A DNA stretch of 64,000 bases. Origin: Saccostrea echinata (taxonomy: Eukaryota). The notes beneath the pieces were generated by a model, which ran no database searches, was not told the origin of the DNA, and saw only the letters and a program-made list of their open reading frames with translations. Location of the stretch: assembly GCF_033153115.1 (NCBI RefSeq), contig NW_026889765.1, positions 11,222,001 through 11,286,000 on the forward strand. Direction: 5' to 3'. The position numbers and the translations under genes are program-made. Positions within the stretch are counted from its first letter, which is position 1. Every line of letters starts with the position of its first letter. This document shows positions 10,101-63,350 of this stretch, piece after piece.

Positions 10101-12345
10101 TTTAGGGGTCATGAATATTTTTCACAAGTTAAATTTGACAAATGACAAACATCAAACACAGTCACAATATTGTCAAGTGTCATTGTGAGCACGCACCTGA
10201 TATTTTATCCTCACACCGGTATCCTGTATATTCGGGGGGACAAGTACAAACATCAGTTGGACTCGTACATTGTCCACCATTTTGACAACTCGGGGTACAG
10301 TGCGCTGAAAATAAATGCAGGAATATTGATTTTAAGATACCTTTCAGTAGTATTTTTCGAGTTCTGTTTAAATCAAATGCATTTTTTATTTAAGCATGCT
10401 AATTTTTCGAAACATTAAACTTCCCTTATAAATAGCCTGGGGAATAACTGGATTTGTATGATATGCTTTTTAAAATAAATTTTAAACTTTAACTTAATAT
10501 TGGATTAACATGAAGTAAAAATTAACTTTTCATCATATATGTAAATGGAGCTGTTTTCAAGGGGTTTTTTTTTTATAATCGTTTAATATGCTATGCTAAC
10601 GATATATCATTGGTTCTTATTCCTCGGTGTCCACTTACCAATGTCACATAACAGAGTGCCTTCTTGTGAGCTGATCCACCCATTACAGCAGCCCTGGGAA
10701 GTCGCATGTGTGACCCTAAAAATAGATTCAATCACTCTGAATACTACTAGAATCTAAACTTTTTCGGACTGTGTTGACATGAAGAATGATTATGTTGCCC
10801 TGTGTCATTTTTTAACAAACAGCATAAATAATGGCATTTAACTTTGAAAAGCAGATCTTATTGTTTTCACAAGAGACATTTTGCTGAGTACCTCTTGGTG
10901 TCAAAAGGGACAGAAATGTCACTATACAATTATTGTTCAAAATATGCAAAAGATGTTATTTGGTGAAATATACAACATATCAATGTCAGCAGGCAAACAG
11001 TTACAGGATACGTCCTGTACGACAAAGAATTGTCATGTATGAAGAATCTTTTATTTGATTGAGTTGTACCCTTTTCATGAGATATGTCACTTTTAATATT
11101 GTTTCAAACATTAAACTATCATCGATTTGTTTCACTCTCTGTTTCTATAACAACAACATCGTTTTAAACCACGGTCGGTAGTCCGCGTATATATTTCTCT
11201 CCTACCCGTGGCTACTGATCAATACATGAAACCTAAAACTGCGACTGGGAATTGAAAGGTTGCCTCAAAGGTCAGATTCCAACTATGCTTTACCCGCATT
11301 GGTCAATATTTTAATGAGCTACGAAATATTCTCTTCTCATTCAACCATGACCGAAAGGGAGAGGATCAGACATTTTGGCCTTGGCTTGAGTCGATGAAAT
11401 ATGACGATAACGAACAGTATTCAATCTCGAAAGTGCAATGAAACGATACAAATTTGGAGCAGAGCAAATACGGACCTCAAATTTTAGAGGTGGGGTCAGG
11501 TGCCATGGAGGAGTGAGCATCCCCTGCCGACCGGTCACACCCGCTGTGTGCTCCTTGTCATAATCGGGAAAAAACCCCGGAAAAATCCGTAGACAGTTCA
11601 GTGTAACAACGGATACATATGAGGCTCGTAAGATATTTCTGTTTTCAAATGTTTTTGTGATGCTTTTGTTTATTAAAAACAGAAAGGACGAAGTCCAGTA
11701 ATATCTGATACTTAAGTTGTAAAGTACTTTGTAGAGACGCCTTTTTGTACAAATAACAGCGTCCTAAATATTTATAGGAATTACATTGAAATATTGCCAA
11801 AGATGGTTGACATGAGAACATAGATATATATATACGTCATGAACTTAAAAAATTGTGTAGAGGGCTTTTCTAAGAAAGCATCATTTAATAAAATTATGAG
11901 TGCAAGATAGTTTCCGGCATATATAAAACTTCATGTGGCTATTTCCTCATCACTTATTTTTGTATCCGTCTGTCCAAAATTATAACAAAGAATGACACAT
12001 CAGCAAAACTTTTCATCATTTTTTAATTTAGAAGTACATATATTCGAATTGCAGAGACTGGGATTTGTATCCCAAATTTCATGCTTGCGTTTTAATGTCG
12101 TTTGTTCGGTGTTATGTGTATCTTTGAAATGTACTCAGTATCTAATACATGAATCTTACTTGAAGAAGAAGCAGTCTAAGTCACCAGGGTTTCTGACGAT
12201 ATCGTTGATTTGTTTGGGTGTTTTTCCTGGAAAGGACTTGGTCTGGTTTAACGTCCATCCCGTTACCACCTTGTCTATGAATTTGGCACATTTTTCCTCT
12301 GATTCTTGACTTATCGTCCGTGTAAAATTACATACATGACTGAGG
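1..12345 (-). CDS. Gel-forming mucin / von Willebrand factor / SCO-spondin / hemolectin-like protein, partial (EMI-like, EGF, TB-like, VWD1-C8-TIL-E, VWD2-C8-TIL-TIL-E, VWD3...)
   Basis: 20 phase-compatible GT-AG exons in transcription order: 12345-12160, 10715-10639 (GCCNGW), 10304-10197 (EGF: CTPSCQNGGQCTSPTDVCTCPPEYTGYRC), 9890-9720 (CCTNGGRGWG, TB-like), 9567-9365 (VWD1: YYRTFDGLEYEFGGMCTY), 8889-8772, 7709-7542 (QGLCGNLN), 7420-7335, 6012-5902, 4092-3933 (C8), 3771-3534 (TIL), 3373-3232 (VWD2: HVATFDGNRYSF), 2990-2661, 2347-1948, 1783-1510, 1366-1156, 995-904, 766-717, 629-294 (VWD3: GDPHYTTFDG), 161-1 (EGLCGNYDG). The signal-peptide exon was not resolved, and the gene runs off the left edge. 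Confidence 0.9.
4147..4191. repeat. Compound (TA)n(GA)n microsatellite
   Basis: Directly visible, in a mucin intron. Confidence 0.95.
5130..5385 (-). mobile_element. tRNA-derived SINE-like interspersed repeat
   Basis: The minus strand begins GGTCGCCCAGTGGTAAGAGCG (A-box-like) with a degenerate B-box (GAGTTGATCC), has a GC-rich body, and ends in an (AAAC)n-type tail near 5130-5140. Confidence 0.6.
8400..8600. repeat. Degenerate ~45-bp minisatellite
   Basis: Recurring atcattagtgg...atcc/gtccataat...tatacat units. Confidence 0.55.
8980..9316. mobile_element. Kolobok-like MITE (TTAA TSD)
   Basis: ttaa|GGACATACGCAA ... TTGCATATGTCC|ttaa: short imperfect TIRs flanked by TTAA. Confidence 0.55.
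11385..11600 (-). repeat. High-copy interspersed repeat fragment (spurious 'GRQGMLTPPWHL' ORF)
   Basis: GC-rich block gggatgctcactcctccatggcacctgaccccacctct, recalled as a common oyster interspersed repeat; intronic. Confidence 0.5.
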
Positions 12346-12869
12346 CTAAAAGTAGAGAAAAAACATTTATTTAAAAGCAAAGCAAAAACCAATGAATCTT
12401 ATTTCTACAAATTTGTTTATTATTTTCATATTTTATTGGTCGACTGTGAACCTCCAAATGTTTAGTTAACTTTTGTTATGTGAACTTCAATTATATACGC
12501 AGGTTTGAAATTGTTGTTTGTTATTTTATTTCTTAATTTTATTTAGTTTCTTTTTTTTCGGATAACAGAGCTCTCTTACATTGTTATTACTCTTACTAAA
12601 ATTTCATGTCACTGACAAACAACTTAACCAGCGCTCTTCGAAATCATTATAATATAGAAAGTATACACGGGGATGTGTTTTCGCCATGTTTGAGATCAAC
12701 TTTTCTATCGCAAATTTTGGACTTATGATAGGAAGTTATATGAATAACCATATACCATATGAGTAACTTCCCTCTTAAACTTTTACATATCATGCTCGTG
12801 CTGAACGCCAGGTTGAAACTTGCGTTTTTGATGCTGTAAATTTTACCCCTTTAGAAGTAAAAAAAAAAA

Positions 12870-13010
12870 AGGTCTCGAAAGATGAGGAGTTCGAGAAATC
12901 AAGAGTAAATTTGCTTAGTTATATAGGGGAAAAATTCGGGACCGGAGACTCACTTCGAGCGATCAAGAACTTCGAGAGATCGAAGTTCGAACCATCAAGA
13001 GTTACCTGTA
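12870..13010. mobile_element. Tc1/mariner-type MITE, right half
   Basis: Repeated ttcgag-a motifs ending ...gagttacCTG|TA; same family as the complete copy at 55244-55419. Confidence 0.5.
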
Positions 13011-13171
13011 TCTTTAAGCGAACAGTTTTAACGGTCCGTAGATAAGATATGTACAAACTATGAATCACCCAAGATTAATTTTAATTAAATAACTAAATTA
13101 CGTTTAGATTTCATCAAACTTTTTTCCTTCCTTTTTTCAATCTTACATTGTACGGTACCTATTTATTAAGA

Positions 13172-13174
<3 letters not shown>

Positions 13175-13232
<58 letters not shown>
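13175..13232. repeat. (CT)n microsatellite
   Basis: Directly visible. Confidence 0.95.
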
Positions 13233-13236
<4 letters not shown>

Positions 13237-46949: not shown

Positions 46950-49387
46950 TTAAGACACCTCCTGGTACAACATACAACATGTTTTTAATAATACTGTAAG
47001 ATTTACATGCAACGTGTATAACTAATTAAGTTGATTAAGCCAAAGGCAACAAATCACATGTACTTTGGTCAGGTCACTCCGAAGAGCATCAATACGGTCA
47101 AATTAAAGATATATAAAATCAGTTTATCATTTGAAACGGAGATGTATCTGTCCGATATTTCCCTCGGGTTGTTTAGAAATATCATCAAATAATTAAAGAT
47201 CTCTCACCTTAATGGAGCACATGTTATTTTGATATTTCTGACAAAACAACGTGGTTCGGTTACTTTTTCTCCCCTCAGATTCTTGTATCCTTTACAGCCT
47301 GAGGGAACTGTTTATAAGACAGGAAAATATAGTGCTGTATTAACATTTTCTGACAATTTCCTGCAGTTATAGAATTCTTTTTTTCTTTTGTGGTTTGTGG
47401 TATTGGTCATATCAGTAATTATACTAGATCTTGTGTTTACCTAAAAATAAATCAGTGTTAACGTAACCTGTACCGGTCTGTCAAATTAGCATGCATAGTA
47501 TAAATACCATTATAAGAATAAAGAGATTCGGTATTACAGTGAGCCAACACACTCGTCAATAACCATGTATTTTATTAACATGTTCCAAAATAAGTACATG
47601 TAATGGATGTTTTAAATGAACAGAGCCAAAAGAAGAAGAAAAAAAACGTTTTTTAATTAAGTAAAAATGCAACCAAAAAAAGAGAGAGAGAGAGAGAGAG
47701 AAAAGAAATGCATATAGATCTAGTAAAGAATTTGTTGCTAAAACTTACATATCAGGCACGTAGAAACAGGGGGGGGGCAGGGGGGCCTCCCCCTCCCCCA
47801 CTTTTTTTCATAGACATTTTTTACTCTTTGAAATGTTAATTGAAAGGCCGGTTGCCCCCCTTTTTTGTTGTAGAATAGTCAAATAAGGTAGAGTCTATAA
47901 CATAACCCAGTCACGGTTTCCGGGAAAATTATTTCCGGTATGGTTTTCAAATGTACAATTTTATTTAATACCGAACCCGATTGTATTTTTCGTGACATTG
48001 AGGCGGGAAATCCAAGTAAGGAAAAGTTCGAGGTATTGAATGCCGTTATCCTTTCATCTGTTCATCTCAGCAACTGTATGAAATGGACGAAGAAACAAGG
48101 TAAGAATGTTGTATGAAGATAATTATGATATAGTGAATATGCGGTATTCAAGAAATTCTCAACACCTGGATAAGTTTTTGTAAAGATATAATCACTGATA
48201 ATACCCGGATTCAAAGAGAGAGGGTGCCAAGTTGTTTTTTTATTATTATTTTTTTTCCTTATCCATAGTGACACTTGGAAAGATCAGTTCGATGTAAGAT
48301 CAACATCACTATCTGGGTAAGTGACATCTTCCACAAAATTGTACAAGTTGTTACAGGAGTACGATTATGCAACTTCCTCTAGGTTCCGATGCTTAAAAAG
48401 TTCCATACAATTTGGAAAGGATGTTGGTAAGGTCTTGTTGCAATATTTTATTTTTAAATGCAACTTCAGCAAAATAATTTCTTGAATCTTCTCATTATTG
48501 TAACAATTTTAAGCTCACCTGAACCATAGACTCATGGTGTCGGGTGGTTACATTTTGATTCCGTGTTTGACCTGCATGGTTACGACCTATTAAGTGGTTT
48601 TGACCTGCTCACAGGTAAGTACATGGGTAGCTGTATATTGATAACATAATAGCTTTTAAATTAATAATTAAAATATGCATTGTCGATAAAAAAATCCTAT
48701 GTAGACAAAAACAAAATGTGAAACTGTTGCAAGTGTTAATTAATTGCTTCAGAACGAAACCACTTGTGTCGAACATGGATTTATGTCGAAACCACATGGG
48801 TCGAACAAGTAAGAGGAAGGTAACCATCCCCATTCTAGGCTCACATGAGCTTTTGTGATTGAAGTTTGTCCATTGTCTGTGTTGTTGGTGTGTTGGGTGT
48901 TGTAAACATTTTTAAAAACTTCTCAACTTATTCTCCAGAAAAGTTGAGAAGTTGAACTTAGAAATTTTTTATGTATTTGTTCAAAGTAAACCCCCCCCCC
49001 CCTCCTTTCAGATTCACATTTGTTAATACCAATTTACACTGAAAATTCTTTTGCAATTACTGTAGATGTAGGAGAGATTGATAAATCCCATATCAGATTT
49101 GTGGACACACAGGAAAATGCTGAACCCCATATAGAATATGATGCTATCCCTTTCATTATTATGGGCAAAAAAATCTTGGAATGTCACCAGGGATATGACA
49201 GAGACGAAAGAAACAACCAAAAGAAACAAAGCAAAGCAAGAGAAGATGTAAGTATGCATTATTTATTCTACATCTAATAAACTAATAATGAGGCAAAGAT
49301 GAGGACTGAGAAGGATAACCCACTGTCTAGGGTTTCACATTAATTTTATGAGAACTAGACCAGTCGGGCTATATCCATTCTCTGGGG

Positions 49388-50773
49388 AACAACATAACCC
49401 AGTCACTGTTTAACATAACCCAGTCACTGAGGAACATAACCCAGTCACTGAGGAACATAACCCAGTCACTGTCAACATAACCCAGTCACTGTTCAACATA
49501 ACCCAGTCATTGTTTAACATAACCCAGTCACTGAGGAACATAACCCAGTCACTGTTCAACATAACCCAGTCACTGTTTAACATAACCCAGTCACTGTTCA
49601 ACATAAGCCAGTCACTGAACAACATAACCCAGTCACTGAGGAACATAACCCAGTCACTGTTTAGCATAACCCAGTCACTACACAACATAAGCCAGTCACT
49701 GTTTAACACAACCCAATCACTTTACATCATAACCCAGTCACTGAACAACATAACCCAGTCACTGTTCAACATAACCCAGTCACTGTTTATCATAACCCAG
49801 TCACTGAGGAACATGACCCAGTCACTGTTCAACATAACCCAATCACTGTTTAATATAACCCAGTCTCTGTTCAACATAACCCAGTCACCTTTCAACATAA
49901 CCCAGTCACTGTTCAACATAACCCAGTCACTGAACAACATAACCCAGTCACTGAACATCATAACCATGTCACTGAGGAACATACCCAGTCACAGAGAAAC
50001 ATAACTAAGTCACCGAACAACATAACCCAGTCACTGAGGAACATAACCCAGTCACTGTTCAACATAACCAAGTCACTGAACAACATAAGCCAGTCACTGT
50101 TTAACACAACCCAATCACTTTACAACATAACCCAGTCACTGAACAACATAACCCAGTCACTGTTCAACATAACCCAATCACTGTTTAATATAACCCAGTC
50201 ACTGTTCAACATAACCTAGTCACCTTTCAACATAACCCAGTCACTGTTCAACATAACCCAGTCACTGAGGAACATAACCCAGTCACTGTTCAACATAACC
50301 CAGTCACTGAACAACATAACCCAGTCACTGAGGAACATAACCCAGTCACTGTTCAACATAACCCAGTCACTGAGGAACATAACCCAGTCACTGTCAACAT
50401 AACCCAGTCACTGAACAACATAACCCAGACACTGTTTAACATAACCCAGTCACTGTTCAACATAAGCCAGTCACTGAACAACATAAGCCAGTCACTGTTT
50501 AACATAACCCAGTCACTGTTTAACATAACGCAGTCACTACACAACATAAGCCAGTCACTGTTTAACACAACCCAATCACTTTACAACATAACCCAGTCAC
50601 TGAACATCATAATCATGTCACTGAGGAACATACCCAGTCACAGAGAAACATAACTAAGTCACTGAACAACATAACCAAGTCACTGAGGAACATAACCCAG
50701 TCACTGTATAACATAACCCAGTCACTGAACAACATAACCCAGTCATTGTTCAACATAACCCAGTCACTGAACA
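49388..50773 (+). repeat. 21-bp tandem array, ~65 copies (left foldback arm, in intron 3 of the element gene)
   Basis: Unit AACATAACCCAGTCACTG + TTC/TTT/AAC/AGG. Confidence 0.97.
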
Positions 50774-53049
50774 TTGTATATTGTAAGTTACTTGGAAATG
50801 GTAAATTGGATCTGAAAGAGATATTCTTGAGAAAATGTTTTCTTTATATATCACACATATATTTCTGTACTCAAATTCACAATATATTTATTAACTTGAC
50901 ATGCTAAATGATTTCAGATCTCTGTAGAATATAATTTGAGGAAAGACCCCAAAAAGGTAAAAATATTTTAACAATTTTGGGGTAAAATCACAATTTTTTT
51001 TTTAACAGCTTTTTTCTGTTGTCAATGAGATGTTAAACTAATTTATTTCTGTAGAACTTACGTATGAATACCTAAGTGTGCATGTTCATCTTTGTCATTA
51101 ATTAATCAACAATTACAGTTGTCCTGCAAAGCCAATATTCTTCAATTAAATATCGGTTTTATTGACAGTTATAAAATGGTTAGGTAATAATGAAGGCCAG
51201 TACACAAAAAGTTCATCTTTGATCAATTACTTTTCAGAAAAGAAAGAGAACATCTTTCTTGTACTCAGATATTAGAGGAAGGTACACAAAAGTTTCAGCA
51301 TGGGCATTGAAATAGAAAAGTTCTTAGTTTAGACTTCTTTATAAGCAATTGCAATAAGTCCAGCAGTTTGAGTTACAGAGTAGTTGTAGCAAACAACCAT
51401 TGCAAAGATTCCCTCATCCTTTTATGTTTATAAATGGGAATCTTTGAGATGTTCCAAATTCAATCATATACATGTACATGAAAGTTTCATACTAAATATT
51501 ATTGCATGTTATTAGTACTAATAATGATATTTAGTAAACATACAAGCATGTAACTTATAAAAAGCACCCTTTTTGGAATTTATTGAATTCAGCACCAGGC
51601 ACAAAATTCAGTATGCTCATTAACTATATTTGTTGTGATTATATGCAATGTATTTACTTTTTATTTTCATAAACCATTTTATGTAAACCTTATGTGTATG
51701 ATTTGTATTAATGATCGGTAATATGTTGTTTGTGTGTAGGGTGTATGTGTGTGTGTGTTTTTGGTTGATTTCACTCAATTAGCTTAATTTATTATTAGAC
51801 ACTGGTTAAATGTTAACTTGCATATACACAGAATTATTAGAAGCATGTGTACATACAGTTTTATTTTGTCATTTCATTTTTGTAGGTAAATATGTTTTTC
51901 TTTTATTTTAGATATGTGCCTTGTTCAAAGGTGAGGCATTTGGGAGAGAGTTCTACAGTTCTTACAGTAAGTATACACAGTTATAAGAGAAAGCAATTCC
52001 CTTTGATTATGTAGAGCTAGGTTTGATAAATTTTTTTTAAATTGATAAACAAATCTGTGTTTTAGGAGGGAAATGAGGTTTACCCATTATAATATCTTTC
52101 ATCCAAATATTTTTTTTTTTCATCAAAAACTGCCAAAAATGTTTTCTTCAGACCTTTTAACAATATAAGCAGAGGGGAAAAAATAGAATATTATTTGATC
52201 TTTGATATAAAAATGGCCTATGAACTTTTTAAGCAGAACTTTGGACTTATAGTCACAGACCAAAACATATATGAGTAAACAGTTGTAGTAACTCAGGCAG
52301 TAATGAAAGATGCTGTCAACACATACTATCAGAAAATGGCCGGTTTGTCAGATTGCTTCTTTAGTTAAATTTTGTAAGTACATCGATAACAGGCTAATGC
52401 AAAACTTCAAGAGAGATTAATCCCTTGCATATCTAATGAATGAAAATCCAGTGTATTGATGCAAGCAGATCCACTTTTTTTTTAAGCAGATTATCAAAAT
52501 TAATGAAACTTGAGGTTGTTAAGACATTTTGACGATATGATCCATGTTCTGTAAGGTGATACCATATATATGACATATAATGCCATATTTACACATATAT
52601 CTTTATAAAAATTGCTACAGTTGTGTATGTATATTTAAGAAATTATTGTGTTAATGAGTGTAGTGTAAATTTAAGAGTGCAGTGCTGATTTTTTATATTT
52701 TTTTTTTTTTTTTTTTTTTTTACATCTAGTCATTTTATTATTTTACTGGACAACCCTTGTATTTTGGTCATAGCAATATAGATGATACAAATGAAAATTC
52801 TTATTAAATGTACTAGTCATTAATTCATCGTATTTTTTCCACTAAACAGAAAGCTTCAGAACAGATATCAGAATGCAATGCCTTGTTGCACAAGAGTGTA
52901 AAAGCTGAAGTGAGTATAATAATAATAATTAATATACATGCAATTCACACCTTTAGTATATAAATGCATTCCAATGTCTTTCTGGTTACTTTCCATGTCA
53001 CCTGACCCATTAAATATTCCTATGAGCATTTCTAATGAAACAAATTCTT

Positions 53050-53228
53050 CTGGTGTCCATCATACTATCTTTAAACTATTTACATTATAAAAATAAAACA
53101 TGTATGATGTTTTAGGGTAACACATTAAATTGATATCCTTTGAAAACCATTGCTGACTGATGCAAAGCTGAGGTCATCAATGGTTTTCAAGGGATAACAA
53201 TTTCACATGTTACCCTAAAAACGTATTA

Positions 53229-53273
<45 letters not shown>

Positions 53274-53866
53274 CGTTGTCCGTCTGTTAATTTTTCACAT
53301 TTTCATCTTCTTTTCAAGAACCACTAGGCCAATTTTAACCAAAGTTGGTACAAAGCATCCTTTGGTGAAGGGGAAATTAAATTGTTAAAATAAGGGGCAA
53401 ACCCCCTTACAAGGGGAGATAATCAAGAAAAGGCAAAAATAGGGTGGGGTCATTAAAAAATCTTCTTCTTAAGAACCGCTGGGCCAGAAAAGCTTAAACT
53501 CGTGGAATCATGCTGGAGTAGTGTAGATTCTAAATTGTTAAAATCATGATCCCCAGGGATAGAGTGGGGCCACAACAGGAATCAAATTTTTACATTGAAA
53601 TATATATGAAAAAATCCTTGGAGATCTCCTTTTTAAGAACCACTGGGCCAGATATGCTGAAATTTATGTGGAAGCAACCTGGAGTAGTGAAGATTACAAA
53701 TTGTTAAAATCATACTCCTTGGGGTAGGGTGGGGCCACAATAGGTATAACATTGGGGAAAGTCTGGTGAAGAACAGCATGGCCAAAGTTACTCAGGTGAG
53801 TGTTGTAGCCCATGGGCCTCTAGTTTTTATAATGTAAATAGTTTAAAGATAGCATGATGGACACCA
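53050..53866. mobile_element. Palindromic MITE interrupted by a HINE (53228-53826), inside the foldback element
   Basis: Outer arms ctggtgtccatcat.ctatctttaaactatttacattataaaa / ttttataatgtaaatagtttaaagatag.atgatggacaccag; inner hairpin 53111-53220; HINE ends ttagctcacctgagctgaaagctcaagtgagc and ctcaggtgag..gcccatgggcctctagtt. Confidence 0.7.
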
Positions 53867-55243
53867 GGAAGCAATGGTTTTCAAGGGATAACCTTAAAAA
53901 TGTAAATATTTTCCTTTGTTATACCAAATCTATTTAGAATAAAGCATTTTAAAAAAAGAACCCACAGTAAACGGTACGGGCATACATTCTGCCCAATTTT
54001 GCACTGTAACCTGTCGTCATGCAATGTCACCGTTGCTATGTAATGTTACGTGGAGGGTAGCAGTACTTTTTAACAAATGTTTTTAAACCAATCAAATTTG
54101 ACTTAACATAAAAGTTAAACAATAAGGTTTGTCTATATTGTTCATGAAAAATTAACATTTTTTTGTTTATATATAGACTGAACAGTCCATGAAACTGGTT
54201 TACATTTTGTGCGAATGGCCAAGGATGGATCTTCCCATAAACAAGGGAACAGGAAACATACAAGGCTACAATATAGCAACTCTGGTAATTTTTAGTATCA
54301 GAGCTGTTGCATGCATGGTTATCTAACAGCCCTGGGTTCAGAATTTAATTCTGTCTTATTTATCACTCAATTTTACTGTTTATTTCACACAATCATATGG
54401 TGTGATCTGACTTTCTGATCAGTTTTCTGAATCCCTATCAACACTTTTTGAAACTGACTCAATCTTCAGGTCAAGTTAGAGAAATTTATTAAGAATTGAT
54501 GTTTAGATATATAAACAGCATGATATATATATAAAAGCTCAACAATGAAGATTAGAGTGAAAAAGGGGATAGTATAGCCTGCTCTAAGTGATTAGTAATA
54601 GTTCTATAACACTACCTGTTTATGGCAGAGAGATTTTCAGGAGAAAAAATTCCTGTAATTATTTAAAAATTTTAACAGTTTGCAAAAGACATCAAAACAA
54701 AGCTGAAGGAAATATTGGAATTAGAAGAGGGTGATAAGAGGTAAATAATAAACATTGAAAGCAGCCATTTACTTTTAAATTGTCTTCATTGAATTTATGG
54801 GCAATAAAATGAGATTCCAGTCATTGGAAATTAAAGAGAATTTATGGTATGTCTTTTGTAGTTTAACACTGTTTTATGCACTTTGGTTTACAAGATGTAC
54901 CGTAACAACTGGTTAAAATTAAATTAACTTGATCGAGTGTTATAATATTCCTTTTACAGGTGTTATGAACCACACTGGAGACATATGCGATGGATTGACA
55001 GGAATGACTTGACCGACCATAATGTGATGAATAACTCTGTGAAAGGAATGGAAGAAAGAAATAAACTTTTTCATAAAGAGGTAACATCCATATGTATTCT
55101 CTGTAGATTTTAATGTATAAGCATACAATGTATTTTACAAGGCTAGTCCTGCATATTCTTGCTCATGTGCAGGTGTTGTTATGGATACTGATTTATAACA
55201 TGATTGTTTTCTTTTTTATTGAACAGAGTCTTTCTCATATATA

Positions 55244-55419
55244 CAGTTGAACTTCGGTATCTCGAACACGGATATCTCAAATCTTATGGATATGTCGAAG
55301 TGATTTGGAAGTCCCAAGCACTTAATATTTTAAGTATTTTACCCCCAATATCTCGAACCCTCAGATATCTCGAAGTTTATTCTCGGTCCCATTGAGTTGG
55401 AGATAACGAGGTTTGACTG
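55244..55419. mobile_element. Tc1/mariner-type MITE (TA TSD) in intron 9 of the element gene
   Basis: TA|CAGTTGAACTTCGGTATCTCGAA ... GAGATAACGAGGTTTGACTG|TA. Confidence 0.8.
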
Positions 55420-57242
55420 TATATATATATATATATGAGCGTGTGTGTGTGTGTGTGTGTTAGAGAAGGAAACAAGTTTATTTGCCTATTTTTTTTCCCT
55501 TCCAATAGAGATGGGCTGAAATGAGTGCTCTTGTTTTAAAAGAATTTGGCTTGTTTAAACCAAAAACACTCATGTAAGTTTATACCTCAATTTAATTTGC
55601 TATTCTATAGCTATATAAACTTACCACGGAAGATGAATCTTAACCTATCACCTTTAGAGCTTTGTGAATATTTAACTCTTGGAGTTAAGAAAATTGTCGT
55701 CAAGACTTCATATAAGTCCGACTAAGATTTATAAATAAATTTCTAGACATATATCATCAGTACATCTGCTTACTAAGGATTGATTTCAAGAGGTAGACAT
55801 AATGTACCCATTAAAGAATATTGTATGTACTGTAAATAATTTTTTTTTTGGTGATAACTTTATTTTTGCATATTAGCGAGACTGTTTGTAGGGGAAAATT
55901 TCATTCACACATAATATTCCTCTTATAAAGATTATATAGGGCAGATATCAAAAGTTGTGAAAATTTTATTTTGTTTATAAATATCAAATAAAAGAAGCAC
56001 ACATTTTGCACCAAGGTAATTCCACTCCCCCTTTTCAACAAATTAAAGACAACTAAGTCATGTTCAGCATTCTTCATTGTACTTTTTTAATTAAAAAAAT
56101 TTGTCGATTTTAGTGGTCTCTTCAGTCCTCCAGGATATTACCTTAGTTTGAAAAACTGCAATAATGGAAAGCTTATGGCAACACTGGAAGATGAGTATGA
56201 TATTTTTTTTATTCATCCTTGTTGAAGAAAATGGAGAGGCATATTGTGTAAAGTCAGTCAGGGGTTATCTTTGTAACTAAATTGTTAACTTTTAAAGTAA
56301 ACCATATGTCTCTTCATATCCATAATTTAATCATAATTCACGTCTGATTTTTTCTTGATTTGATTGATCTCCATAGACAACTTTATTCTTAATTATTTTC
56401 ATTCTCTTTTAGGACAGGACAGAGATTGAATGAAGGAGTTAGATACTTTAAGGATGTATTGCTTGTAGAAGCAAGAATCATTATCGCTTCTGTTGTCAAG
56501 AACATAACATATAGAGAAGCTGAAGAACTTCTCTATCCATTGAAATAACAAATTTATGTTTCAGTTGATTGAGTTTGCAAATTTGTTATATTGGAATATT
56601 TCGATTGTGATAGCATTGCAAAAGATGTTCTACATCAATTGCTATATGACAACAATGTTGAACTTACAATATTTGTCAGGGCTGATCAATTGTATTTGGT
56701 TACTCTAGATGAACTCATAAACTCTAATAATTGTGATTTCATTCAAATCAAATCCACACCAGTCCCAGACTGTTTTATCATTAATTCCTACTAGAAACAT
56801 TAGTTTAAATGTAGGAAGAATTTGATAAAATTTGATGTATTTGACTTTGAAAATATCTAATAAAGTTTTGTTTTTCTGACAAGTGAAATGAATTTCACAT
56901 GCAGAATTCATACCATTGGATTTGGGTGTATAATTTAAAAGGAACACTTGTGCAACCATGCATTATTTCTTAAACAGTACCTGTAATACATTTGTATGGT
57001 CTTAATATTGTGTGGCAATTTTTTTCCCCTAGGATTAATTGATCTATGTTATTTTTATCTTTAGGTTCCTCAGTGACTAAACCCAATTTGTATAAAAATT
57101 GGGAGCAGAGCTCTAGAAAAAGGCTTAACATTAGTTTATGTTCCAAATAATGATTGTGTCAAATAAATTATTTTCCTTACCACTTTTGTATATATGCCTT
57201 ATATATGGAGACCAAATTATGCACATTAATTCATATTCAATG

Positions 57243-60200
57243 CTTGGGTTATGTTTCTCAGTGACTGGGTTATGTTGTTCAGTGACTGGGTTATGCTGTT
57301 GAGAGACTGGGTTATGCTGAACAGTGACTGGGTTATGTTCCTCAGTGACTGGGTTATGTTGAACAGTGACTGGGTTATGTTAAACTGTGATTTGGTTATG
57401 TTGTTCTGTGACTGGGTTATGTTGTTCTGTGACTGGGTTATGCTGTTCTGTGACTGGGTTATGTTGAAGAGTGACCGGGTAATGTTAAACAGTGACTGGG
57501 TTATGTTGTTCAGTGACTGCGTTATGTTCCTCAGTGACTGGGTTATGTTAAACGGTGACTGGGTTATGTTAAACAGTGACTGGGTTATGTTGAACTGTGA
57601 CTGGGTTAGGTTTCCCAATGATGGGTTTTGTTGTACAGTAACTGGGTTATGTTTCTTAGTGACTGGGTTATGTTCCTCTGTGACTGGGTTATGTTGCGCA
57701 GAGACTGGATTATGTTGCTTGGAGACTGAATTATGTTGTTCAGTGACTGGGTTATATATCTCTGTGACTAGGTTTTGTTGTTGAGTGACTGGATTATGTT
57801 TCTCTGTGACTGGGTAATGTTGTTCAAAAACTACGTTATGTTTCTCAGTGACTGGGTTATGTTAAACAGTGACTGGGTTATGTTAAACAGTGACTGGGTT
57901 ATGTTGTTCAGTGAGTGGGTTATGATGTACAGTGACTGGGTATGTTAAGTAGTGACTGGGTTATGTTAAACAGTGACTGGGTTATGTTGTATAGTGACTG
58001 GGTTATGTTCCTCAGTGACTGGGTTATGATAGACAGTGAGTGGGTTATGTTAAACAGTGACTGGGTTATGTTGTTCAGTGACTGGGTTATGTTGAACAGT
58101 GACTGGGTTATGTTGTGTAGTGACTGGGTTATGTTCCTCAGTGACTGGGTTATGATAAACAGTGACTGGGTTATGTTAAACAGTGACTGGGTTATGTTGT
58201 TCAGTGACTGGGTTATGTTAAACAGTGACATGGTTATGTTGTTCAGGGACTGGGTTATGATGTACAGTGACTGGGTATGTGAAGTAGTGACTGGGTTATG
58301 TTGAACAGTGACTGGGTTATGTTGTTTAGTGACTGGGTTATGTTCCTCAGTGACTGGGTTATGTTCCTCAGTGACTGGGTTATGTTGTTCAGTGACTGGG
58401 TTATGTTGTTCAGTGACTGGATTATGTTCCTCAGTGACTGGGTTATGTTGTTCAGTGACTTGGTTATGTTGAACAGTGACTCTGTTATGTTAAACAGTGA
58501 CTGGGTAATGTTGTTCAGTGACTGCATTATGTTCCTCAGTGACTGGGTTATTCTAAACGGTGACTGGGGTATGTTAAACAGTGACTGGGTTATGTTCCTC
58601 AGTGACTGGGTTATGTTCCTCAGTGACTGGGTTATGTTGTATAGTGACTGGGTTATGTTAAACAGTGACTGGGTTATGTTGTTCAGTGACTGGGTTATGT
58701 TCCTCAGTGACTGGTTTATGTTGAACAGTGACTGGGTTTTGTTGTTCATTCATTGGGTATGTTGAACTGTGACTGGGTTATGTTGAACTGTAACTGGGTT
58801 AGGTTTCCCAATGATGGGTTTTGTTGTACAGTAACTGGGTTATGTTTCTTAGTGACTGGGTTATGTTCCTCTGTGACTGGGTTTTGTTGCGCAGAGACTG
58901 GTTTATGTTGCTTGGAGACTAAATTATGTTGTTCAGTGACTGGGTTATATATCTCTGTGTCTAGGTTTTGTTGTTGAGTGACTGGATTATGTTTCTCTGT
59001 GACTGGGTAATGTTGTTCAAAAACTACGTTATGTTTCTCAGTGACTGGGTTATGTTAAACAGTGACTGGGTTATGTTAAACTGTGACTGGTTTATGTTGT
59101 TCAGTGACTGGGTTATGTTCCTCAGTGACTGGGTTATATTAAACAGTGACTGGGTTTTGTTGTTTAGTGAATGGGTTATGTTAAGCAGTGACTGGGTTAT
59201 GTTAAACAGTGACTGGGTTATGTTGTTCAGTGACTGGGTTATGTTAAACAGTGACATGGTTATGTTGTTCAGGGACTGGGTTATGATGTACAGTGACTGG
59301 GTATGTGAAGTAGTGACTGGGTTATGTTGAACAGTGACTGGGTTATGTTGTTTAGTGACTGGGTTATGTTCCTCAGTGACTGGGTTATGTTCCTCAGTGA
59401 CTGGGTTATGTTGTTCAGTGACTGGGTTATGTTGTTCAGTGACTGGATTATGTTCCTCAGTGACTGGGTTATGTTGTTCAGTGACTTGGTTATGTTGAAC
59501 AGTGACTCTGTTATGTTAAACAGTGACTGGGTAATGTTGTTCAGTGACTGCATTATGTTCCTCAGTGACTGGGTTATTCTAAACGGTGACTGGGGTATGT
59601 TAAACAGTGACTGGGTTATGTTCCTCAGTGACTGGGTTATGTTCCTCAGTGACTGGGTTATGTTGTATAGTGACTGGGTTATGTTAAACAGTGACTGGGT
59701 TATGTTGTTCAGTGACTGGGTTATGTTCCTCAGTGACTGGTTTATGTTGAACAGTGACTGGGTTTTGTTGTTCATTCATTGGGTATGTTGAACTGTGACT
59801 GGGTTATGTTGAACTGTAACTGGGTTAGGTTTCCCAATGATGGGTTTTGTTGTACAGTAACTGGGTTATGTTTCTTAGTGACTGGGTTATGTTCCTCTGT
59901 GACTGGGTTTTGTTGCGCAGAGACTGGTTTATGTTGCTTGGAGACTAAATTATGTTGTTCAGTGACTGGGTTATATATCTCTGTGTCTAGGTTTTGTTGT
60001 TGAGTGACTGGATTATGTTTCTCTGTGACTGGGTAATGTTGTTCAAAAACTACGTTATGTTTCTCAGTGACTGGGTTATGTTAAACAGTGACTGGGTTAT
60101 GTTAAACTGTGACTGGTTTATGTTGTTCAGTGACTGGGTTATGTTCCTCAGTGACTGGGTTATATTAAACAGTGACTGGGTTTTGTTGTTTAGTGAATGG

Positions 60201-61265
60201 GTTATGTTAAGCAGTGACTGGGTTATGTTAAACAGTGACTGGGTTATGTTGTTCAGTGACTGGGTTATGTTGTATAGTGACTGGGTCATGTTCCTCAGTG
60301 ACTGGGTTATGTTAAACAGTGACTGGGTATGTTGTTCAGTGACTGGGTTATGTTGTTCAGTGACTGGGTTATGTTGAACAGTGACTGGGTTATGTTGTTC
60401 AGTGACTGGGTTATGTTGAACAGTGACTGGGTTATGTTATACAGTGACTGGGTTATGTTAAACAATGACTGGGTTATGTTAAACAGTGACTGGGTTATGT
60501 TCCTCAGTGACTGGGTTATGTTCCTCAGTGACTGGGTTATGTTGTTCAGTGACTGGGTATGTTGAACAGTGACTCTGTTATGTTAAACAGTGACTGGGTT
60601 ATGTTGTTCAGTGACTGCATTATGTTCCTCAGTGACTGGGTTATGTTGAACAGTGACTGGGTTATGTTGTTTAGTGACTGGGTTATGTTCCTCAGTGACT
60701 GGGTTATGTTCCTCAGTGACTTAGTTATGTTCCTCAGTGACTGGGTTATGTTGAACAGTGACTGGGTTATGTTAAACAGTGACTGGGTTATGTTGTTCAG
60801 TGACTGGGTTATGTTCCTCAGTGACAGGGTTATGTTGTATAGTGACTGGGTTATGTTCCTCAGTGACTGGGTTATGTTGAACAGTGACTGGGTTATGTTA
60901 AACAGTGACTGGGTTATGTTTCTCTCTGGGTTATGTTGTTGAGAGACAGGGTTATGTTGCTCGGTGACTGGGTAATGATTTTCAGTGACTGGTTTATGTT
61001 ATTCAGGGACTGGGATTTGGTTCTCAGTAACTGGGTTATATTTTTCAGTGACTGGGTTATGCTATTGAGAGACTGGGTTATGTTGAACTGTGACTGGGTT
61101 AGGTTTCCCAGTGTATGTGTGTTCATTATCTCACAGTTGAACAGTGAATTGGTTATGTTATTGATTGAGTATAATATGTTGAACAGTGACTAGGTTAGGT
61201 TTTCCAGTGACTGAGTCAAGTTTCACAGTGACTAGGTTATGTTGTTCAAAGACTAGATTATGTTG
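57243..61265 (-). repeat. 21-bp tandem array, ~190 copies (right foldback arm), with a 1026-bp higher-order duplication
   Basis: Unit CAGTGACTGGGTTATGTT+NNN, the reverse complement of the left array; identical pseudo-ORFs recur at an offset of 1026. Confidence 0.97.
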
Positions 61266-63350
61266 GTTTGTAACTGGGAAATTTTTTTCTGTGACCTAAT
61301 GGGTCATATTTAAGAATGATCACTTCTTGTAAAACTGCAGGTCAACAAGTTAGGGATTATTGTTTTTTCACTGTACGTGATTGTCTTTATGGGCGGGATT
61401 CCTTTTACCCTTGGAAGATTACCGTAAAAAATAATTATTGAGAAATTCAAGTCTTTTCTGCTGTGTATACACACATACTAACTATAGGTCACTAGTTCTA
61501 CCAGTGGCTAACAGGCCATGAAAACGCAATCTATTAATTTATCATGTTATACACTGTAACTATTTAATACCCTAACCTTCGTGAAAATCGTTCATTCGCC
61601 TGAATGTCCTAATATTAAGACTCCGATTATGGCTATTGATCGTATTATTTACCACACACCATAGTGTTTACAAAACTATATTGCATCGGGATCGAATATG
61701 CGTTATATTACAAAAAACCATACCGGAAATAATTTTCCCGGAAACCGTGACTGGGTTATGTTATAGACTCTACCGTCAAATAAGGGTTTTTTAGTTGTGT
61801 ATGAATAAAATTTGGTACTGAAAGAAGTTGGAACCTCCCCCCCCCCCCCAACCCCGAAATATTTTCAATTTTCATTTTTACTTTTTTTTTTGGCTTGACA
61901 AGTTTTTTTTCAGGTAAGTTGATTTTTTTTTCTCTGGCTGCCCCCCCCCCCACTTTTAAAAACGATGCTACGTCACTGCATATAACAAACATACTATGTA
62001 GAAAACTGAAATTCATTCTCTCTCTCTCTCTCTCTCTCTCAATTCAAATCGGAAATAAAAAATACACATATGAAGGTTTTAACCTTTAGATATATAGACG
62101 CTTTACAAGTTTCTGAATGACTATGATTATTCCTACAGTAATATCCAATCAGAGTAGGTTTAACATGGAAATTACACGTAAACAAATCGCACATCTGAAG
62201 AGACTTTTTATTGGGCAATTCCACAGGTTGCAAGGTTCACCAACATGGACGTGAGTAGGAGGAAAACCTCCAAGTTGAAATAAACCAGAATGTATATCGT
62301 GTTTCTTGAAGGGATAATTTAGTAAAAGGTAGAAATATTTCTTTATAATTTTTTATGTGTAACAATCATTTCGCACAGTCTAAAAGACAAGGAAAGAAGT
62401 TGACCTGCGAGTGTCACGTTACTGAATTTACTTGTTAACATATTGAAATCAATGTAAAATTTAACAACATACTGCGAAAATACTGATAGGTTTTATGGTT
62501 TTGAAGATATGAATTAAACTCTGGTTAAATTTCTACGGCTACAGAAGATAATGCACTGGACACGGGCACAGTACACATTAAATAGGTTTATACAGAATAT
62601 TGCAGAAATCAATATCTCAAATCTGCTGTGAAATTTATAAAAAAAAAAAAAAATATGTGTGATTTAAAATTATTTGTTAAACTGTACTTAAGTTTGTGTA
62701 TCTGCAATGAAGAGCCTACTGCCTGCAGACGACATATATACATGTACTGATCACAAAGTTAGCCAAGAAATCAATAAACATCAGGGCCAATAGCACATGT
62801 GAGAATATTCAGAAGTAGAAACTCAGTAGATCACAGTGAGAGTGTTGATTAATGACCATTAAGCATCCACACAAAGAAATCCATTATTGAACTTAATTCA
62901 GAACTTGTAAAGTAGAATTAGACAGTTTTTCTTTTTCCTATTACTATTTTATTCACTGCAGAACTTTGAGTAGTGTTCTCATTTAAAAAACAAACATACA
63001 AACAAACACAGCAGGTTCATTACAGGTACTGGCTGCTATCCTTGACTATCCTGCAGATTAATGGATTACAGGAATTGTTGTATATATATGTGACTTTCAA
63101 AAAAAATGTCAAAGTGGAGCTATGATTAAATTTTCTCTTGTTTGAATGATGTATTCTAGCTGACCAATATTTTTCAGGGTCTTATGTGGGTGGGTATGTA
63201 TTATCAGATACTGATAAATGTAGGTTTTAAATAAGATATGGACAATTTGGTAAAAAACAAAACAAAAAAAAGAATTTAAACATGATAGCACTGAAAAAGG
63301 ATTCGGTAGGGGCAATTTTGATGGGTTGGTCAGAGCACTTCAAACATAAT

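What the first reader, a model, noticed from the sequence alone, without database searches (positions are those of the whole stretch)
48083..56548. Cryptic 11-exon gene in the element joins a CaRF-like DNA-binding region to a PWWP3A/MUM1-like helical domain
Seen: eleven small GT-AG exons join in one frame at all ten junctions, giving MDEETSDTWKDQFDVRSTSLSG*VTSSTKLYKLLQEYDYATSSRF...HIEYDAIPFIIMGKKILECHQGYDRD...DPKKKRKRTS (NLS-like)...KTKLKEILE...GVRYFKDVLLVEARIIIASVVKNITYREAEELLYPLK*. The ORF track shows only exon 3. From recall, 'YDAIPF....ILECHQG.R' matches vertebrate CaRF/ALS2CR8 ('YDGIPF...VMECQYG.R'), and the last exon matches the PWWP3A/MUM1 C-terminus ('RFILDVLLPEAII.AI..V....Y..AEE'). 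The KxxCPA half of the CaRF-like domain and any DDE core were not found. Inference: an element-encoded nuclear DNA- or chromatin-binding accessory protein (possibly anti-silencing, analogous to plant MULE accessory genes). Alternatively, a deletion fused a transposase 5' end to a second gene. Either way it would link two vertebrate host domains to one transposon family.
Basis: partly seen in the sequence, partly recalled or inferred. Interest (0 to 1): 0.85.

Follow-up and report, generated by a model that had tools for sequence, protein, structure and literature searches.

The report
Gutted oyster Mutator transposon gene remnant
The "cryptic gene" is real coding sequence, but it is what remains of a large oyster Mutator-type transposon's own coding region after about 14 kb was deleted from its middle; it is not a purpose-built accessory gene, although its relatives do place a CaRF-like and a MUM1/PWWP3A-like domain in one transposon lineage.

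Summary
Two conserved exons were missed: 54177-54284 and 56114-56194. Exon 3 is a genuine but partial ALS2CR8/CaRF domain (Pfam E 8.7e-9, profile positions 7-54 of 235).

The window is from Saccostrea echinata. The element (47887-61774) has 61-bp perfect TIRs and a 9-bp TSD. It is a non-autonomous deletion copy of a roughly 29-kb Mutator-like element.

A long sister copy (C22) and bivalve proteins such as Ostrea edulis XP_056022087.1 show the full coding order:
- ALS2CR8
- MULE/ZSWIM1-3 RNaseH core
- SWIM
- Ulp1 (C48) protease
- PHD-like finger
- NLS
- a C-terminal tail

The window keeps only the first three exons and the last ten. Its exon-2 stop is private; 12 sister copies compared read Tyr there (C22 lacks the exon). 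RefSeq already annotates this locus (LOC133188918) with a different exon set.

In the window the MUM1/PWWP3A match is weak (17.8 bits, below the cut-off of 27). A Mya arenaria member of the same clade passes the cut-off, at 31.6 bits.

The accessory-protein reading is not supported. The scan noted this element twice on this same stretch.

The parts
47878..47886 (.). Target-site duplication GTCAAATAA (left copy)
   Evidence: The identical 9-mer flanks the right end at 61775-61783.
47887..47947 (+). 5' terminal inverted repeat, 61 bp
   Evidence: Exact reverse complement of 61714-61774.
48083..48099 (+). Exon 1 (MDEET..), putative start of the transposase gene
   Evidence: The ATG and GT donor are kept in all 13 sister copies, but divergence is high at 9%. 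The assignment as the start is tentative.
48269..48426 (+). Exon 2, transposase N-terminus, with a private TAA at 48318-48320
   Evidence: The 12 sister copies that retain exon 2 read TAT (Tyr) at this codon; C22 lacks most of the exon. The related C14 family also reads Tyr. The second half is 76% identical to the C14 element.
49012..49247 (+). Exon 3, first part of the ALS2CR8/CaRF-type DNA-binding domain
   Evidence: Pfam PF15299, E 8.7e-9, 36.1 bits against a cut-off of 28.9, profile positions 7-54 of 235.
49390..50769 (+). 5' subterminal array of 21-bp repeats (about 66 units), lying inside intron 3 of the transposase gene
   Evidence: TRF result. In the long copy C22 the next ALS2CR8 exons follow directly after this array.
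50773..50778 (.). Internal deletion junction
   Evidence: Compared with the long sister copy C22, about 14.1 kb of unique sequence (C22rc 10287-24406) is missing here. The lost stretch holds the rest of ALS2CR8, the MULE core, SWIM, two Ulp1 units and PHD-like exons. The 5' array is also about 2.7 kb shorter.
50918..50956 (+). Exon 4 (..EYNLRKDPKK), first retained exon of the 3' coding part
   Evidence: Matches 'LLEYNLRKDPPK' of Ostrea edulis P0021, just after its PHD-like region. Identical in C22 and C8.
51238..51281 (+). Exon 5 (KRKRTSFLYSDIRG), NLS-like
   Evidence: Conserved in the C14 family (79%, E 3.6e-5) and in P0021.
51912..51966 (+). Exon 6
   Evidence: Its homologue is contiguous with exons 7 and 7b in S. 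cucullata models P0019 and P0029.
52850..52909 (+). Exon 7
   Evidence: tblastn of P0019, 70% identity.
53217..53827 (.). Nested repeat (MITE/SINE-like) inside intron 7
   Evidence: Matches at 70-84% at other positions in the sister loci and in tandem copies at the start of the C22 locus.
54177..54284 (+).
   Evidence: AG/GT bounded, 108 nt. Used in P0032 (100% match), P0001, P0019, P0026 and P0028.
54679..54740 (+). Exon 8
   Evidence: 100% match to P0032 and P0028. Copy divergence is 0.88%, against 2.92% in non-coding sequence.
54960..55080 (+). Exon 9 (CYEPHWRH.RWIDRNDL...)
   Evidence: 67% identical to Ostrea P0021. 62% identical paralogues with open frames lie on C9 and C1.
55509..55573 (+). 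Exon 10
   Evidence: tblastn of P0019, P0021 and P0028. The RefSeq model P0032 skips it.
56114..56194 (+).
   Evidence: AG/GT bounded, 81 nt. Present in P0001, P0003, P0019, P0026 and P0028. Read in a shifted frame in P0032.
56413..56548 (+). Exon 11, the C-terminal tail with the DV..(P/V)EA...AEE motif and the stop codon
   Evidence: PF20886, 17.8 bits, E 0.0033, profile positions 89-121. 17 copies are 93-100% identical at protein level. Homologues occur in oysters and mussels.
57245..61264 (-). 3' subterminal array of the same 21-bp unit, in inverted orientation (about 185 units)
   Evidence: TRF result.
61714..61774 (-). 3' terminal inverted repeat, 61 bp
61775..61783 (.). Target-site duplication GTCAAATAA (right copy)

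Best explanation
The window holds a 13.9-kb non-autonomous copy of a Mutator-like (MULE) DNA transposon of the oyster Saccostrea echinata.

The parent element is about 29 kb long. Its coding region runs in this order:
- a CaRF-type (ALS2CR8) DNA-binding domain, split by an intron that contains the 5' array of 21-bp repeats
- a MULE/ZSWIM1-3 RNase-H-like catalytic core
- a SWIM zinc finger
- one or two Ulp1 (C48) protease plus PHD-like units
- a basic NLS-like stretch
- a roughly 185-residue C-terminal module, whose last about 32 residues resemble the PWWP3A/B C-terminal domain

An internal deletion removed everything between the 5' array and the intron upstream of exon 4. Such deletions are typically attributed to abortive gap repair. 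What remains is the first three exons and the last ten exons on one strand. Both sets are genuine exons of the same transcription unit, or of two adjacent ones, so they still carry GT-AG sites. Exon 3 ends on a codon boundary and exons 4 and 7b start on one, so they splice in frame.

The result is a by-product, not a designed gene:
- This copy has a private Tyr-to-stop change in exon 2.
- It keeps only the first fifth of the DNA-binding domain.
- It has no catalytic core.
- It would have to be moved in trans by transposase from a longer copy.

Shown: the anatomy, the deletion, the domain identities, the private stop and the homologous gene models. Inferred: the deletion mechanism, mobilisation in trans, and that any protein made from this copy has no function of its own.
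For: Element ends. 61-bp perfect TIRs and a 9-bp TSD.

Family. About 17 sister copies at 91-100% identity, with different internal breakpoints.

Long copy C22.
- It is colinear with the window on both sides and carries about 14 kb of extra unique sequence exactly at window 50773/50778.
- That stretch encodes ALS2CR8 positions 59-89 and 90-143.
- It also encodes MULE and ZSWIM1-3_RNaseH-like domains (E 4e-9 and 3e-11).
- SWIM-, Ulp1- and PHD-like exons are conserved with the related C14 element.

Ostrea edulis P0021 (1327 aa). It has ALS2CR8, MULE, SWIM, C48 and a PHD-like region, followed by homologues of window exons 4-11. It maps colinearly onto C22. Mytilus P0008 has C48 plus the same tail.

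Decay.
- The exon-2 TAA is unique to this copy; the 12 sister copies that retain exon 2 read TAT, and C22 lacks most of the exon.
- Other copies have their own stops and indels in exons 2-3, 4, 6, 7, 9 and 10.
- Crude dN/dS is 0.75-0.83 for exons 2b-3 and 8-11.

RefSeq P0032 matches this locus at 100% identity.
Against: - Exons 8-11 diverge about half as fast as the surrounding non-coding DNA among copies (1.49% against 2.92%; exon 11 0.68%).
- Gene models in two Saccostrea species (P0032 and P0001) independently join exon 3 to exon 7b in frame. A selected chimeric product could therefore exist.
It is not known whether any transcript is made, or which one.
- The only long copy found (C22) is itself damaged. 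It lacks most of exon 2 and has an in-frame stop in the LCDFHREQAW exon. No intact source of transposase was shown.
Confidence: 0.85

Rival explanations
1. The chimeric open frame is a functional, selected element-encoded protein. It would join an N-terminal fragment of the CaRF-like DNA-binding domain to the C-terminal module and act in the nucleus on chromatin. It might act as a repressor or regulator of transposition, in the way truncated transposases (the P-element KP type) do.
For: - The exon 3 to 4 and exon 3 to 7b joins are in frame.
- RefSeq-type models in S. echinata (P0032) and S. cucullata (P0001) both start at the Met inside exon 3 and continue into exon 7b.
- The NLS-like KKKRKR is retained.
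- Substitution is reduced in exons 3, 8, 9 and 11.
Against: - The retained ALS2CR8 piece lacks the K..CP zinc-finger half and everything after profile position 54.
- Copies differ in breakpoints. C7 even lacks exon 3, and C28/C29 keep only exon 11.
- Many copies carry stops or frameshifts.
- dN/dS is about 0.8.
- The P0032 model is frame-shifted and ends after 10 residues of exon 10b.
- The lower exon divergence can come from selection on the parent lineage before each copy was made.
Confidence: 0.08
2. The 3' exons (4-11) belong to a separate accessory gene of the element, encoding Ulp1, PHD and the tail. It would have its own promoter and be distinct from the transposase gene. On this reading the window copy fuses two different genes, rather than two ends of one gene.
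For: - Saccostrea long copies have two Ulp1-PHD units.
- Mytilus P0008 is a model with C48 plus the tail and no transposase.
- The Logan-derived protein P0024 ends shortly after the SWIM region, which suggests a transposase-only product.
- Plant Kaonashi MULEs carry Ulp1 in a separate gene (PMC13317346).
Against: - Single gene models span the transposase, C48, PHD and tail in Ostrea (P0021) and Mytilus (P0049), and the transposase plus C48 in Ciona, sea urchins, Hydra and clams.
- These are automatic predictions, and they can merge neighbouring genes.
Confidence: 0.35
3. The exon chain is a chance stitching of short open frames and splice-like dinucleotides in AT-rich repeat DNA, and no gene is there.
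For: - The exons are very short, 17-236 nt.
- One in-frame stop is present.
- The bacterial-style ORF list shows only exon 3 and exon 11 as open frames.
Against: - Exons 2-11 each have homologues in predicted proteins of Saccostrea, Ostrea, Magallana/Crassostrea and Mytilus.
- Exon 3 passes Pfam's curated cut-off.
- Splice sites are conserved across 13 copies.
Confidence: 0.01

Closest known systems
Non-autonomous internal-deletion derivatives of Mutator-like elements (MuDR to Mu-type derivatives; the Ac to Ds type of relationship)
   Same: - Long TIRs and a 9-bp TSD.
- Both ends and the subterminal repeats are retained while the catalytic core is lost.
- Many copies exist with different internal breakpoints.
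- Residual exons of the transposase gene remain.
   Different: - This is an animal (oyster) element of unusual size.
- It has kilobase-scale inverted arrays of a 21-bp unit, one of them inside a transposase intron.
- The residual exons still splice in frame, and RefSeq annotates them as a gene.
Ulp1-carrying plant MULEs (Kaonashi/KIU, CUMULE, VANDAL with VANC)
   Same: A Mutator-superfamily element that carries a Ulp1/C48 protease domain along with its transposase (PMC13317346).
   Different: - In plants Ulp1 is a transduplicated host fragment in a separate gene of non-TIR MULEs.
- Here C48 is predicted in the same polypeptide as the transposase in many animal phyla, and it is followed by a PHD-like finger and a further tail.
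- The window copy has lost the Ulp1 part.
Vertebrate CaRF (ALS2CR8), Pfam PF15299
   Same: Exon 3 matches the N-terminal part of the family's DNA-binding domain above the curated cut-off. Sister copies and relatives supply the rest of the domain.
   Different: - In the oyster the domain is the N-terminus of a MULE transposase, not a stand-alone transcription factor.
- The window copy keeps only profile positions 7-54.
Vertebrate ZSWIM1/ZSWIM3 (MULE-derived host proteins; Pfam PF21056 plus SWIM)
   Same: The catalytic core of the long sister copies and of the bivalve relatives matches ZSWIM1-3_RNaseH-like and SWIM.
   Different: - Those are single-copy host genes.
- Here the core sits in a TIR-bounded, multi-copy element, and it is absent from the window copy.
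PWWP3A/PWWP3B (MUM1) C-terminal domain, Pfam PF20886
   Same: - The last exon shares the DV..PEA...AEE helix with profile positions 89-121.
- A Mya arenaria protein of the same MULE clade matches profile positions 9-135 at 31.6 bits.
   Different: - The window match is below the family cut-off and covers a quarter of the domain.
- 16 of 17 homologues of the tail give no hit.
- There is no PWWP domain.
- A clean profile of the oyster tail does not align significantly with the Mya or Mytilus tails.

Membership tests
Mutator superfamily (MULE) element | Terminal inverted repeats with a 9-11 bp target-site duplication | tested here: met
   61-bp perfect TIRs at 47887-47947 and 61714-61774. The TSD is GTCAAATAA on both sides.
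Mutator superfamily (MULE) element | A DDE transposase with a MULE domain encoded inside the element | tested here: not met
   No MULE-domain sequence lies in window 47887-61774. The domain is present in the long sister copy C22 (PF10551 E 4.3e-9, PF21056 E 3e-11) and in the C14 family. The window copy is therefore non-autonomous.
ALS2CR8 / CaRF DNA-binding domain (PF15299) | Score above Pfam's curated cut-off of 28.9 bits | tested here: met
   Exon 3 scores 36.1 bits, E 8.7e-9.
ALS2CR8 / CaRF DNA-binding domain (PF15299) | A complete domain, including the K..CP zinc-finger half and the C-terminal helical part (profile positions 55-235) | tested here: not met
   The window has positions 7-54 only. 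Positions 59-143 are in C22. Positions 163-230 are in the C9b and C14 copies.
PWWP3A/B C-terminal domain (PF20886) | Score above Pfam's curated cut-off of 27 bits | tested here: not met
   - Window exon 11: 17.8 bits.
- S. cucullata-like P0019: 11.9 bits.
- Mytilus P0049: 16.0 bits.
- The own-genome six-frame search found nothing at E<=0.001.
- Only Mya arenaria P0065, a clade relative, passes, at 31.6 bits.
PWWP3A/B C-terminal domain (PF20886) | Match over most of the 141-position profile | tested here: not met
   Only positions 89-121 match in the window, P0019 and P0049. Full-length homologues P0001, P0003, P0021 and P0008 give no hit, even with exons 8-11 naturally joined.
PWWP3A/B C-terminal domain (PF20886) | Profile-profile or structural similarity to vertebrate PWWP3A/B | not testable with these tools
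   No PWWP3A/B sequences, Pfam alignment or AlphaFold DB models were available. The AlphaFold model of the tail was poor (pLDDT 58) and had no PDB match.
Ulp1-carrying MULE (Kaonashi-like) | A Peptidase_C48 domain encoded within the element | tested here: not met
   Absent from the window copy. Present in relatives P0021, P0008, P0045-P0050 and others. C48-like exons are in C22 and C14.
Intact protein-coding gene | An uninterrupted reading frame from the start codon to the stop codon | tested here: not met
   TAA at codon 23 of the 13-exon model, private to this copy. Exons 4-11, with 7b and 10b, are open for 256 codons.

The most novel reading that the evidence does not exclude
Two vertebrate host domains of obscure origin both descend from, or were exchanged with, a single ancient metazoan MULE lineage. 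The two domains are the CaRF (ALS2CR8) DNA-binding domain and the PWWP3A/B (MUM1) C-terminal domain. The lineage's long protein reads ALS2CR8, DDE, SWIM, Ulp1, PHD and a PWP3A-B_C-like tail. The Ulp1 (deSUMOylase), PHD and tail part would be the element's device for acting on host chromatin or on SUMO-dependent silencing. I found no paper in the searched library that states either link.
Probability: 0.4. Interest if true: 0.65.

Novelty: new member of a known kind. Interest (0 to 1): 0.4.

Why it matters
The window feature is an ordinary product of transposon decay. It is useful mainly as a caution: a deletion can leave a neat, in-frame, spliceable "gene" that annotation pipelines then call a protein.

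The wider value is in what its relatives show. A MULE clade spread across animals, from Hydra and corals to amphioxus, Ciona and fish, uses the CaRF-type domain as its DNA-binding head. It often carries a Ulp1 protease and a PHD finger. In at least one clam it ends in a bona fide PWWP3A/B-type C-terminal domain.

This gives a testable origin for CaRF, and possibly for part of MUM1/PWWP3A. It also provides an animal counterpart to the plant Ulp1-bearing MULEs. The 21-bp arrays, built from a TIR motif, are natural candidates for the binding sites of that domain.

Tried and rejected
1. [quoted passage not shown] hhalign first gave P 0.0016 and 0.0083 against single sequences and then E 6e-9 against a 49-sequence transposase profile. 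This was an artefact. My module profile contained P0014 and P0016, which carry real transposase sequence aligned into module columns. With a clean profile P is 0.15, no better than the reversed-sequence control at 0.096. Rejected.

2. The clean module profile against the Mya P0065 and Mytilus P0049 tails gave no significant alignment (P 0.55 and 0.14). Pairwise tests with shuffling gave:
- exon 11 against the P0049 tail, p 0.003
- P0049 against P0065, p 0.0007
- exon 11 against P0065, p 0.18

3. The AlphaFold2 model of the module had mean pLDDT 58, and Foldseek against the PDB found nothing at E<=0.001.

4. The ESM Atlas search with exon 11 gave no usable hit.

5. PF20886 in the whole genome in six frames gave no match.

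7. The joined spliced protein was never sent to a search tool. Exons were searched one by one by reference, and joined natural homologues from the databases stood in for the joined model.

8. Literature searches for ALS2CR8/CaRF or PWWP3A/MUM1 together with transposase terms returned nothing relevant.

Full report
**What is in the sequence**

With exact boundaries (48083-48099, 48269-48426, 49012-49247, 50918-50956, 51238-51281, 51912-51966, 52850-52909, 54679-54740, 54960-55080, 55509-55573, 56413-56548) every intron is GT-AG. The joined length is 993 nt and the translation reproduces the quoted strings, including the TAA inside exon 2. I joined the exons only in a local script, to count frames and stops. 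Exons were searched one at a time by reference, and naturally joined homologues from the databases were used in place of the joined model.

**Domain tests on the exons**

Pfam places exon 3 in ALS2CR8/CaRF: PF15299, E 8.7e-9, 36.1 bits against a curated cut-off of 28.9, profile positions 7-54 of 235. It places exon 11 weakly in the PWWP3A/B C-terminal family: PF20886, E 0.0033, 17.8 bits against a cut-off of 27, positions 89-121 of 141. The other exons long enough to scan (20 residues or more) gave nothing.

**The element and the organism**

- The exons lie in a transposon that runs from 47887 to 61774. It has 61-bp perfect terminal inverted repeats and a 9-bp target-site duplication, GTCAAATAA.
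- It has two inverted arrays of a 21-bp unit, at 49390-50769 and 57245-61264.
- The window is contig C16 of a 923-Mb assembly.
- Four proteins found later sit on contigs whose lengths equal those of C7, C8, C15 and C16, and their sources name them Saccostrea echinata.
- The genome holds about 17 copies of the family at 91-100% identity. They differ in how much of the interior they retain.

**The parent structure**

One copy, on C22, is about 29 kb long.

- It is colinear with the window up to the end of the 5' array, and again from window 50778 onward. In between it carries about 14.1 kb of unique sequence and about 2.7 kb more array.
- Next comes an open frame matching the MULE and ZSWIM1-3 RNaseH-like domains (E 4.3e-9 and 3e-11).
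- After that come SWIM-, Ulp1- and PHD-like exons.
- A related family on C14 has the same order, and its SWIM frame passes Pfam. The sister copy C9b keeps ALS2CR8 positions 163-229.

So the CaRF-like region is the DNA-binding head of a MULE transposase. Its third intron houses the 5' repeat array, and the window copy has lost everything from that intron to the intron upstream of exon 4.

**What exons 4-11 are**

A search of 1.84 billion representative proteins with exon 11 found 16 bivalve proteins.

- Ostrea edulis XP_056022087.1 (P0021, 1327 aa) has ALS2CR8, MULE/RNaseH, SWIM, Peptidase_C48 and a PHD-like region. It then runs "LLEYNLRKDPPKKRKRSSYIYSDLRGR..." into clear homologues of window exons 4, 5 and 7-11. 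It maps colinearly on C22.
- Mytilus coruscus P0008 is C48 plus the same tail.
Both are GT-AG bounded and both are multiples of three.
- The corrected model has 13 exons, 1182 nt, and the single internal stop at codon 23.
- P0032 (RefSeq LOC133188918) is identical to the window over exon 3 from an internal Met, then exons 7b, 8 and 9, and then 10 residues of exon 10b in a shifted frame. So the locus is already annotated, with another exon choice.
- P0019 is a 229-residue continuous frame on a 2,049-bp Logan contig and spans exons 6 to 11. These exons occupy 4.6 kb of genomic DNA here, so I infer the contig is a spliced transcript from a close relative.

**Is the chimeric frame a selected product?**

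Mostly no.

- The TAA in exon 2 is private: the 12 other copies that retain exon 2, and the C14 family, read Tyr.
- Other copies carry their own nonsense codons and frameshifts in exons 2, 3, 4, 6, 7, 9 and 10.
- Breakpoints differ between copies. C7 lacks exon 3, and C28 and C29 keep only the last exon.
- Substitutions against the window copy run at 2.92% in non-coding DNA, 1.49% in exons 8-11 and 0.68% in exon 11, but 5.4% in exon 2.
- A crude count of distinct synonymous and non-synonymous variants gives ratios of 0.75-0.83.
- The lower exon divergence fits constraint on the parent lineage before each copy arose. It is not evidence for selection on the remnant.
- Nine of the ten in-frame junctions follow simply from the exons being real. 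Only the exon 3 to 4 join is new, and it had a one-in-three chance.

**The MUM1/PWWP3A question**

Against the link:
- Only the window peptide among 17 tail homologues hits PF20886.
- Full-length homologues with exons 8-11 naturally joined do not raise the score.
- The genome-wide six-frame search is empty.
- A clean profile of the tail does not align significantly with the Mya or Mytilus tails.

For the link:
- I searched with the transposase part of P0021. That query is independent of the tail. It returned 49 proteins with ALS2CR8 plus MULE from bivalves, gastropods, Lingula, Hydra, corals, Nematostella, echinoderms, amphioxus, Ciona, an insect and a fish. Many also have C48 and PHD.
- One of them, Mya arenaria MAR_013320 (P0065), has PF20886 at 31.6 bits, above the cut-off. 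The match covers profile positions 9-135 at its C-terminus, after a C48-like catalytic motif seen by eye (DGSSCGVYV); Pfam gave no C48 hit for P0065, though its near-duplicate P0075 scores a sub-threshold 15.8 bits.
- Mytilus edulis P0049 hits the same profile positions, 90-121, at 16 bits at its C-terminus, after a PHD finger.
- Pairwise tests give p 0.003 for exon 11 against P0049 and p 0.0007 for P0049 against P0065, all in one register.

I read this as about 65% support that the last helix of the oyster tail is homologous to the PWWP3A/B C-terminal domain. There is no support that the whole 185-residue module is.

**A false lead**

hhalign seemed to show that the module is a diverged copy of the second half of the transposase core, at E 6e-9. 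Two rows of my module alignment, P0014 and P0016, carry genuine transposase sequence. Without them the signal falls to the level of a reversed control. I reject that idea.

**How it works**

Shown:
- A TIR-bounded, TSD-flanked MULE copy without a catalytic core.
- It retains three 5' exons and ten 3' exons of the family's coding region.
- It has a private stop codon.
- It is annotated by RefSeq as an uncharacterised gene.

Inferred:
- The deletion arose during transposition-associated repair.
- The copy moves only with transposase supplied in trans.
- The 21-bp arrays, which repeat a TIR motif, are binding sites for the ALS2CR8-type head.
- In complete elements the Ulp1, PHD and tail part acts on host chromatin or SUMO-dependent silencing. 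The analogy is with the plant Ulp1-bearing Kaonashi/VANDAL elements, whose VANC proteins counter silencing (PMC13317346).

The only long copy I found is itself damaged.

**Verdict**

The window feature is an ordinary non-autonomous transposon. The more interesting point lies with the relatives: one animal MULE clade carries the CaRF-type domain and, in at least one member, a PWWP3A/B-type tail. I found no paper in the searched library that states this.

Noticed in passing
window 49390-50769; L040/L039 (C22) and L033 (C14): The 5' subterminal 21-bp repeat array lies inside an intron that splits the ALS2CR8 DNA-binding domain of the transposase gene. Profile positions 7-54 come before it and 59-143 come right after it. 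Array length varies from about 1.4 kb here to about 4.1 kb in C22.
   Followed up: partly
L033-L035 (G000:C14:2345000-2372000): A related MULE family is 49-76% identical in exons 2-3 and 60-85% identical in the transposase. It has the same gene order and two tandem Ulp1-PHD units. Its homologue of the tail's last exon is only 34% identical, so the tail evolves much faster than the transposase.
   Followed up: partly
window 53217-53827 (intron 7): A nested repeat of about 600 bp (MITE/SINE-like) is present at this position in all sister copies. It also occurs elsewhere, including a tandem run at the start of the C22 locus and a second copy in C8.
   Followed up: no
G000:C9:10140896-10144457 and G000:C1:22294902-22299524: There are open-frame paralogues of exons 9 and 11 at 62-63% identity, and weaker ones on C54, C2 and C36. 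One of these sits in a 116-residue open frame on C54.
   Followed up: no
P0024 (Logan contig, Ostrea edulis-like): A 289-residue frame covers the SWIM region of the transposase and stops 9 residues after 'GAKSGSE'. That is the point where the long model P0021 continues into the Ulp1 part. This hints at alternative transposase-only and transposase-Ulp1-PHD-tail products.
   Followed up: no
one search hit list: ALS2CR8 plus MULE proteins occur in a cyprinid fish (Megalobrama amblycephala, 26 member sequences) and in amphioxus and Ciona. So the clade that shares CaRF's DNA-binding domain is present in chordate genomes.
   Followed up: no
window 42788-44018: A 168/342-bp satellite-like tandem repeat with a poly-C tract lies upstream of the element.
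   Followed up: no
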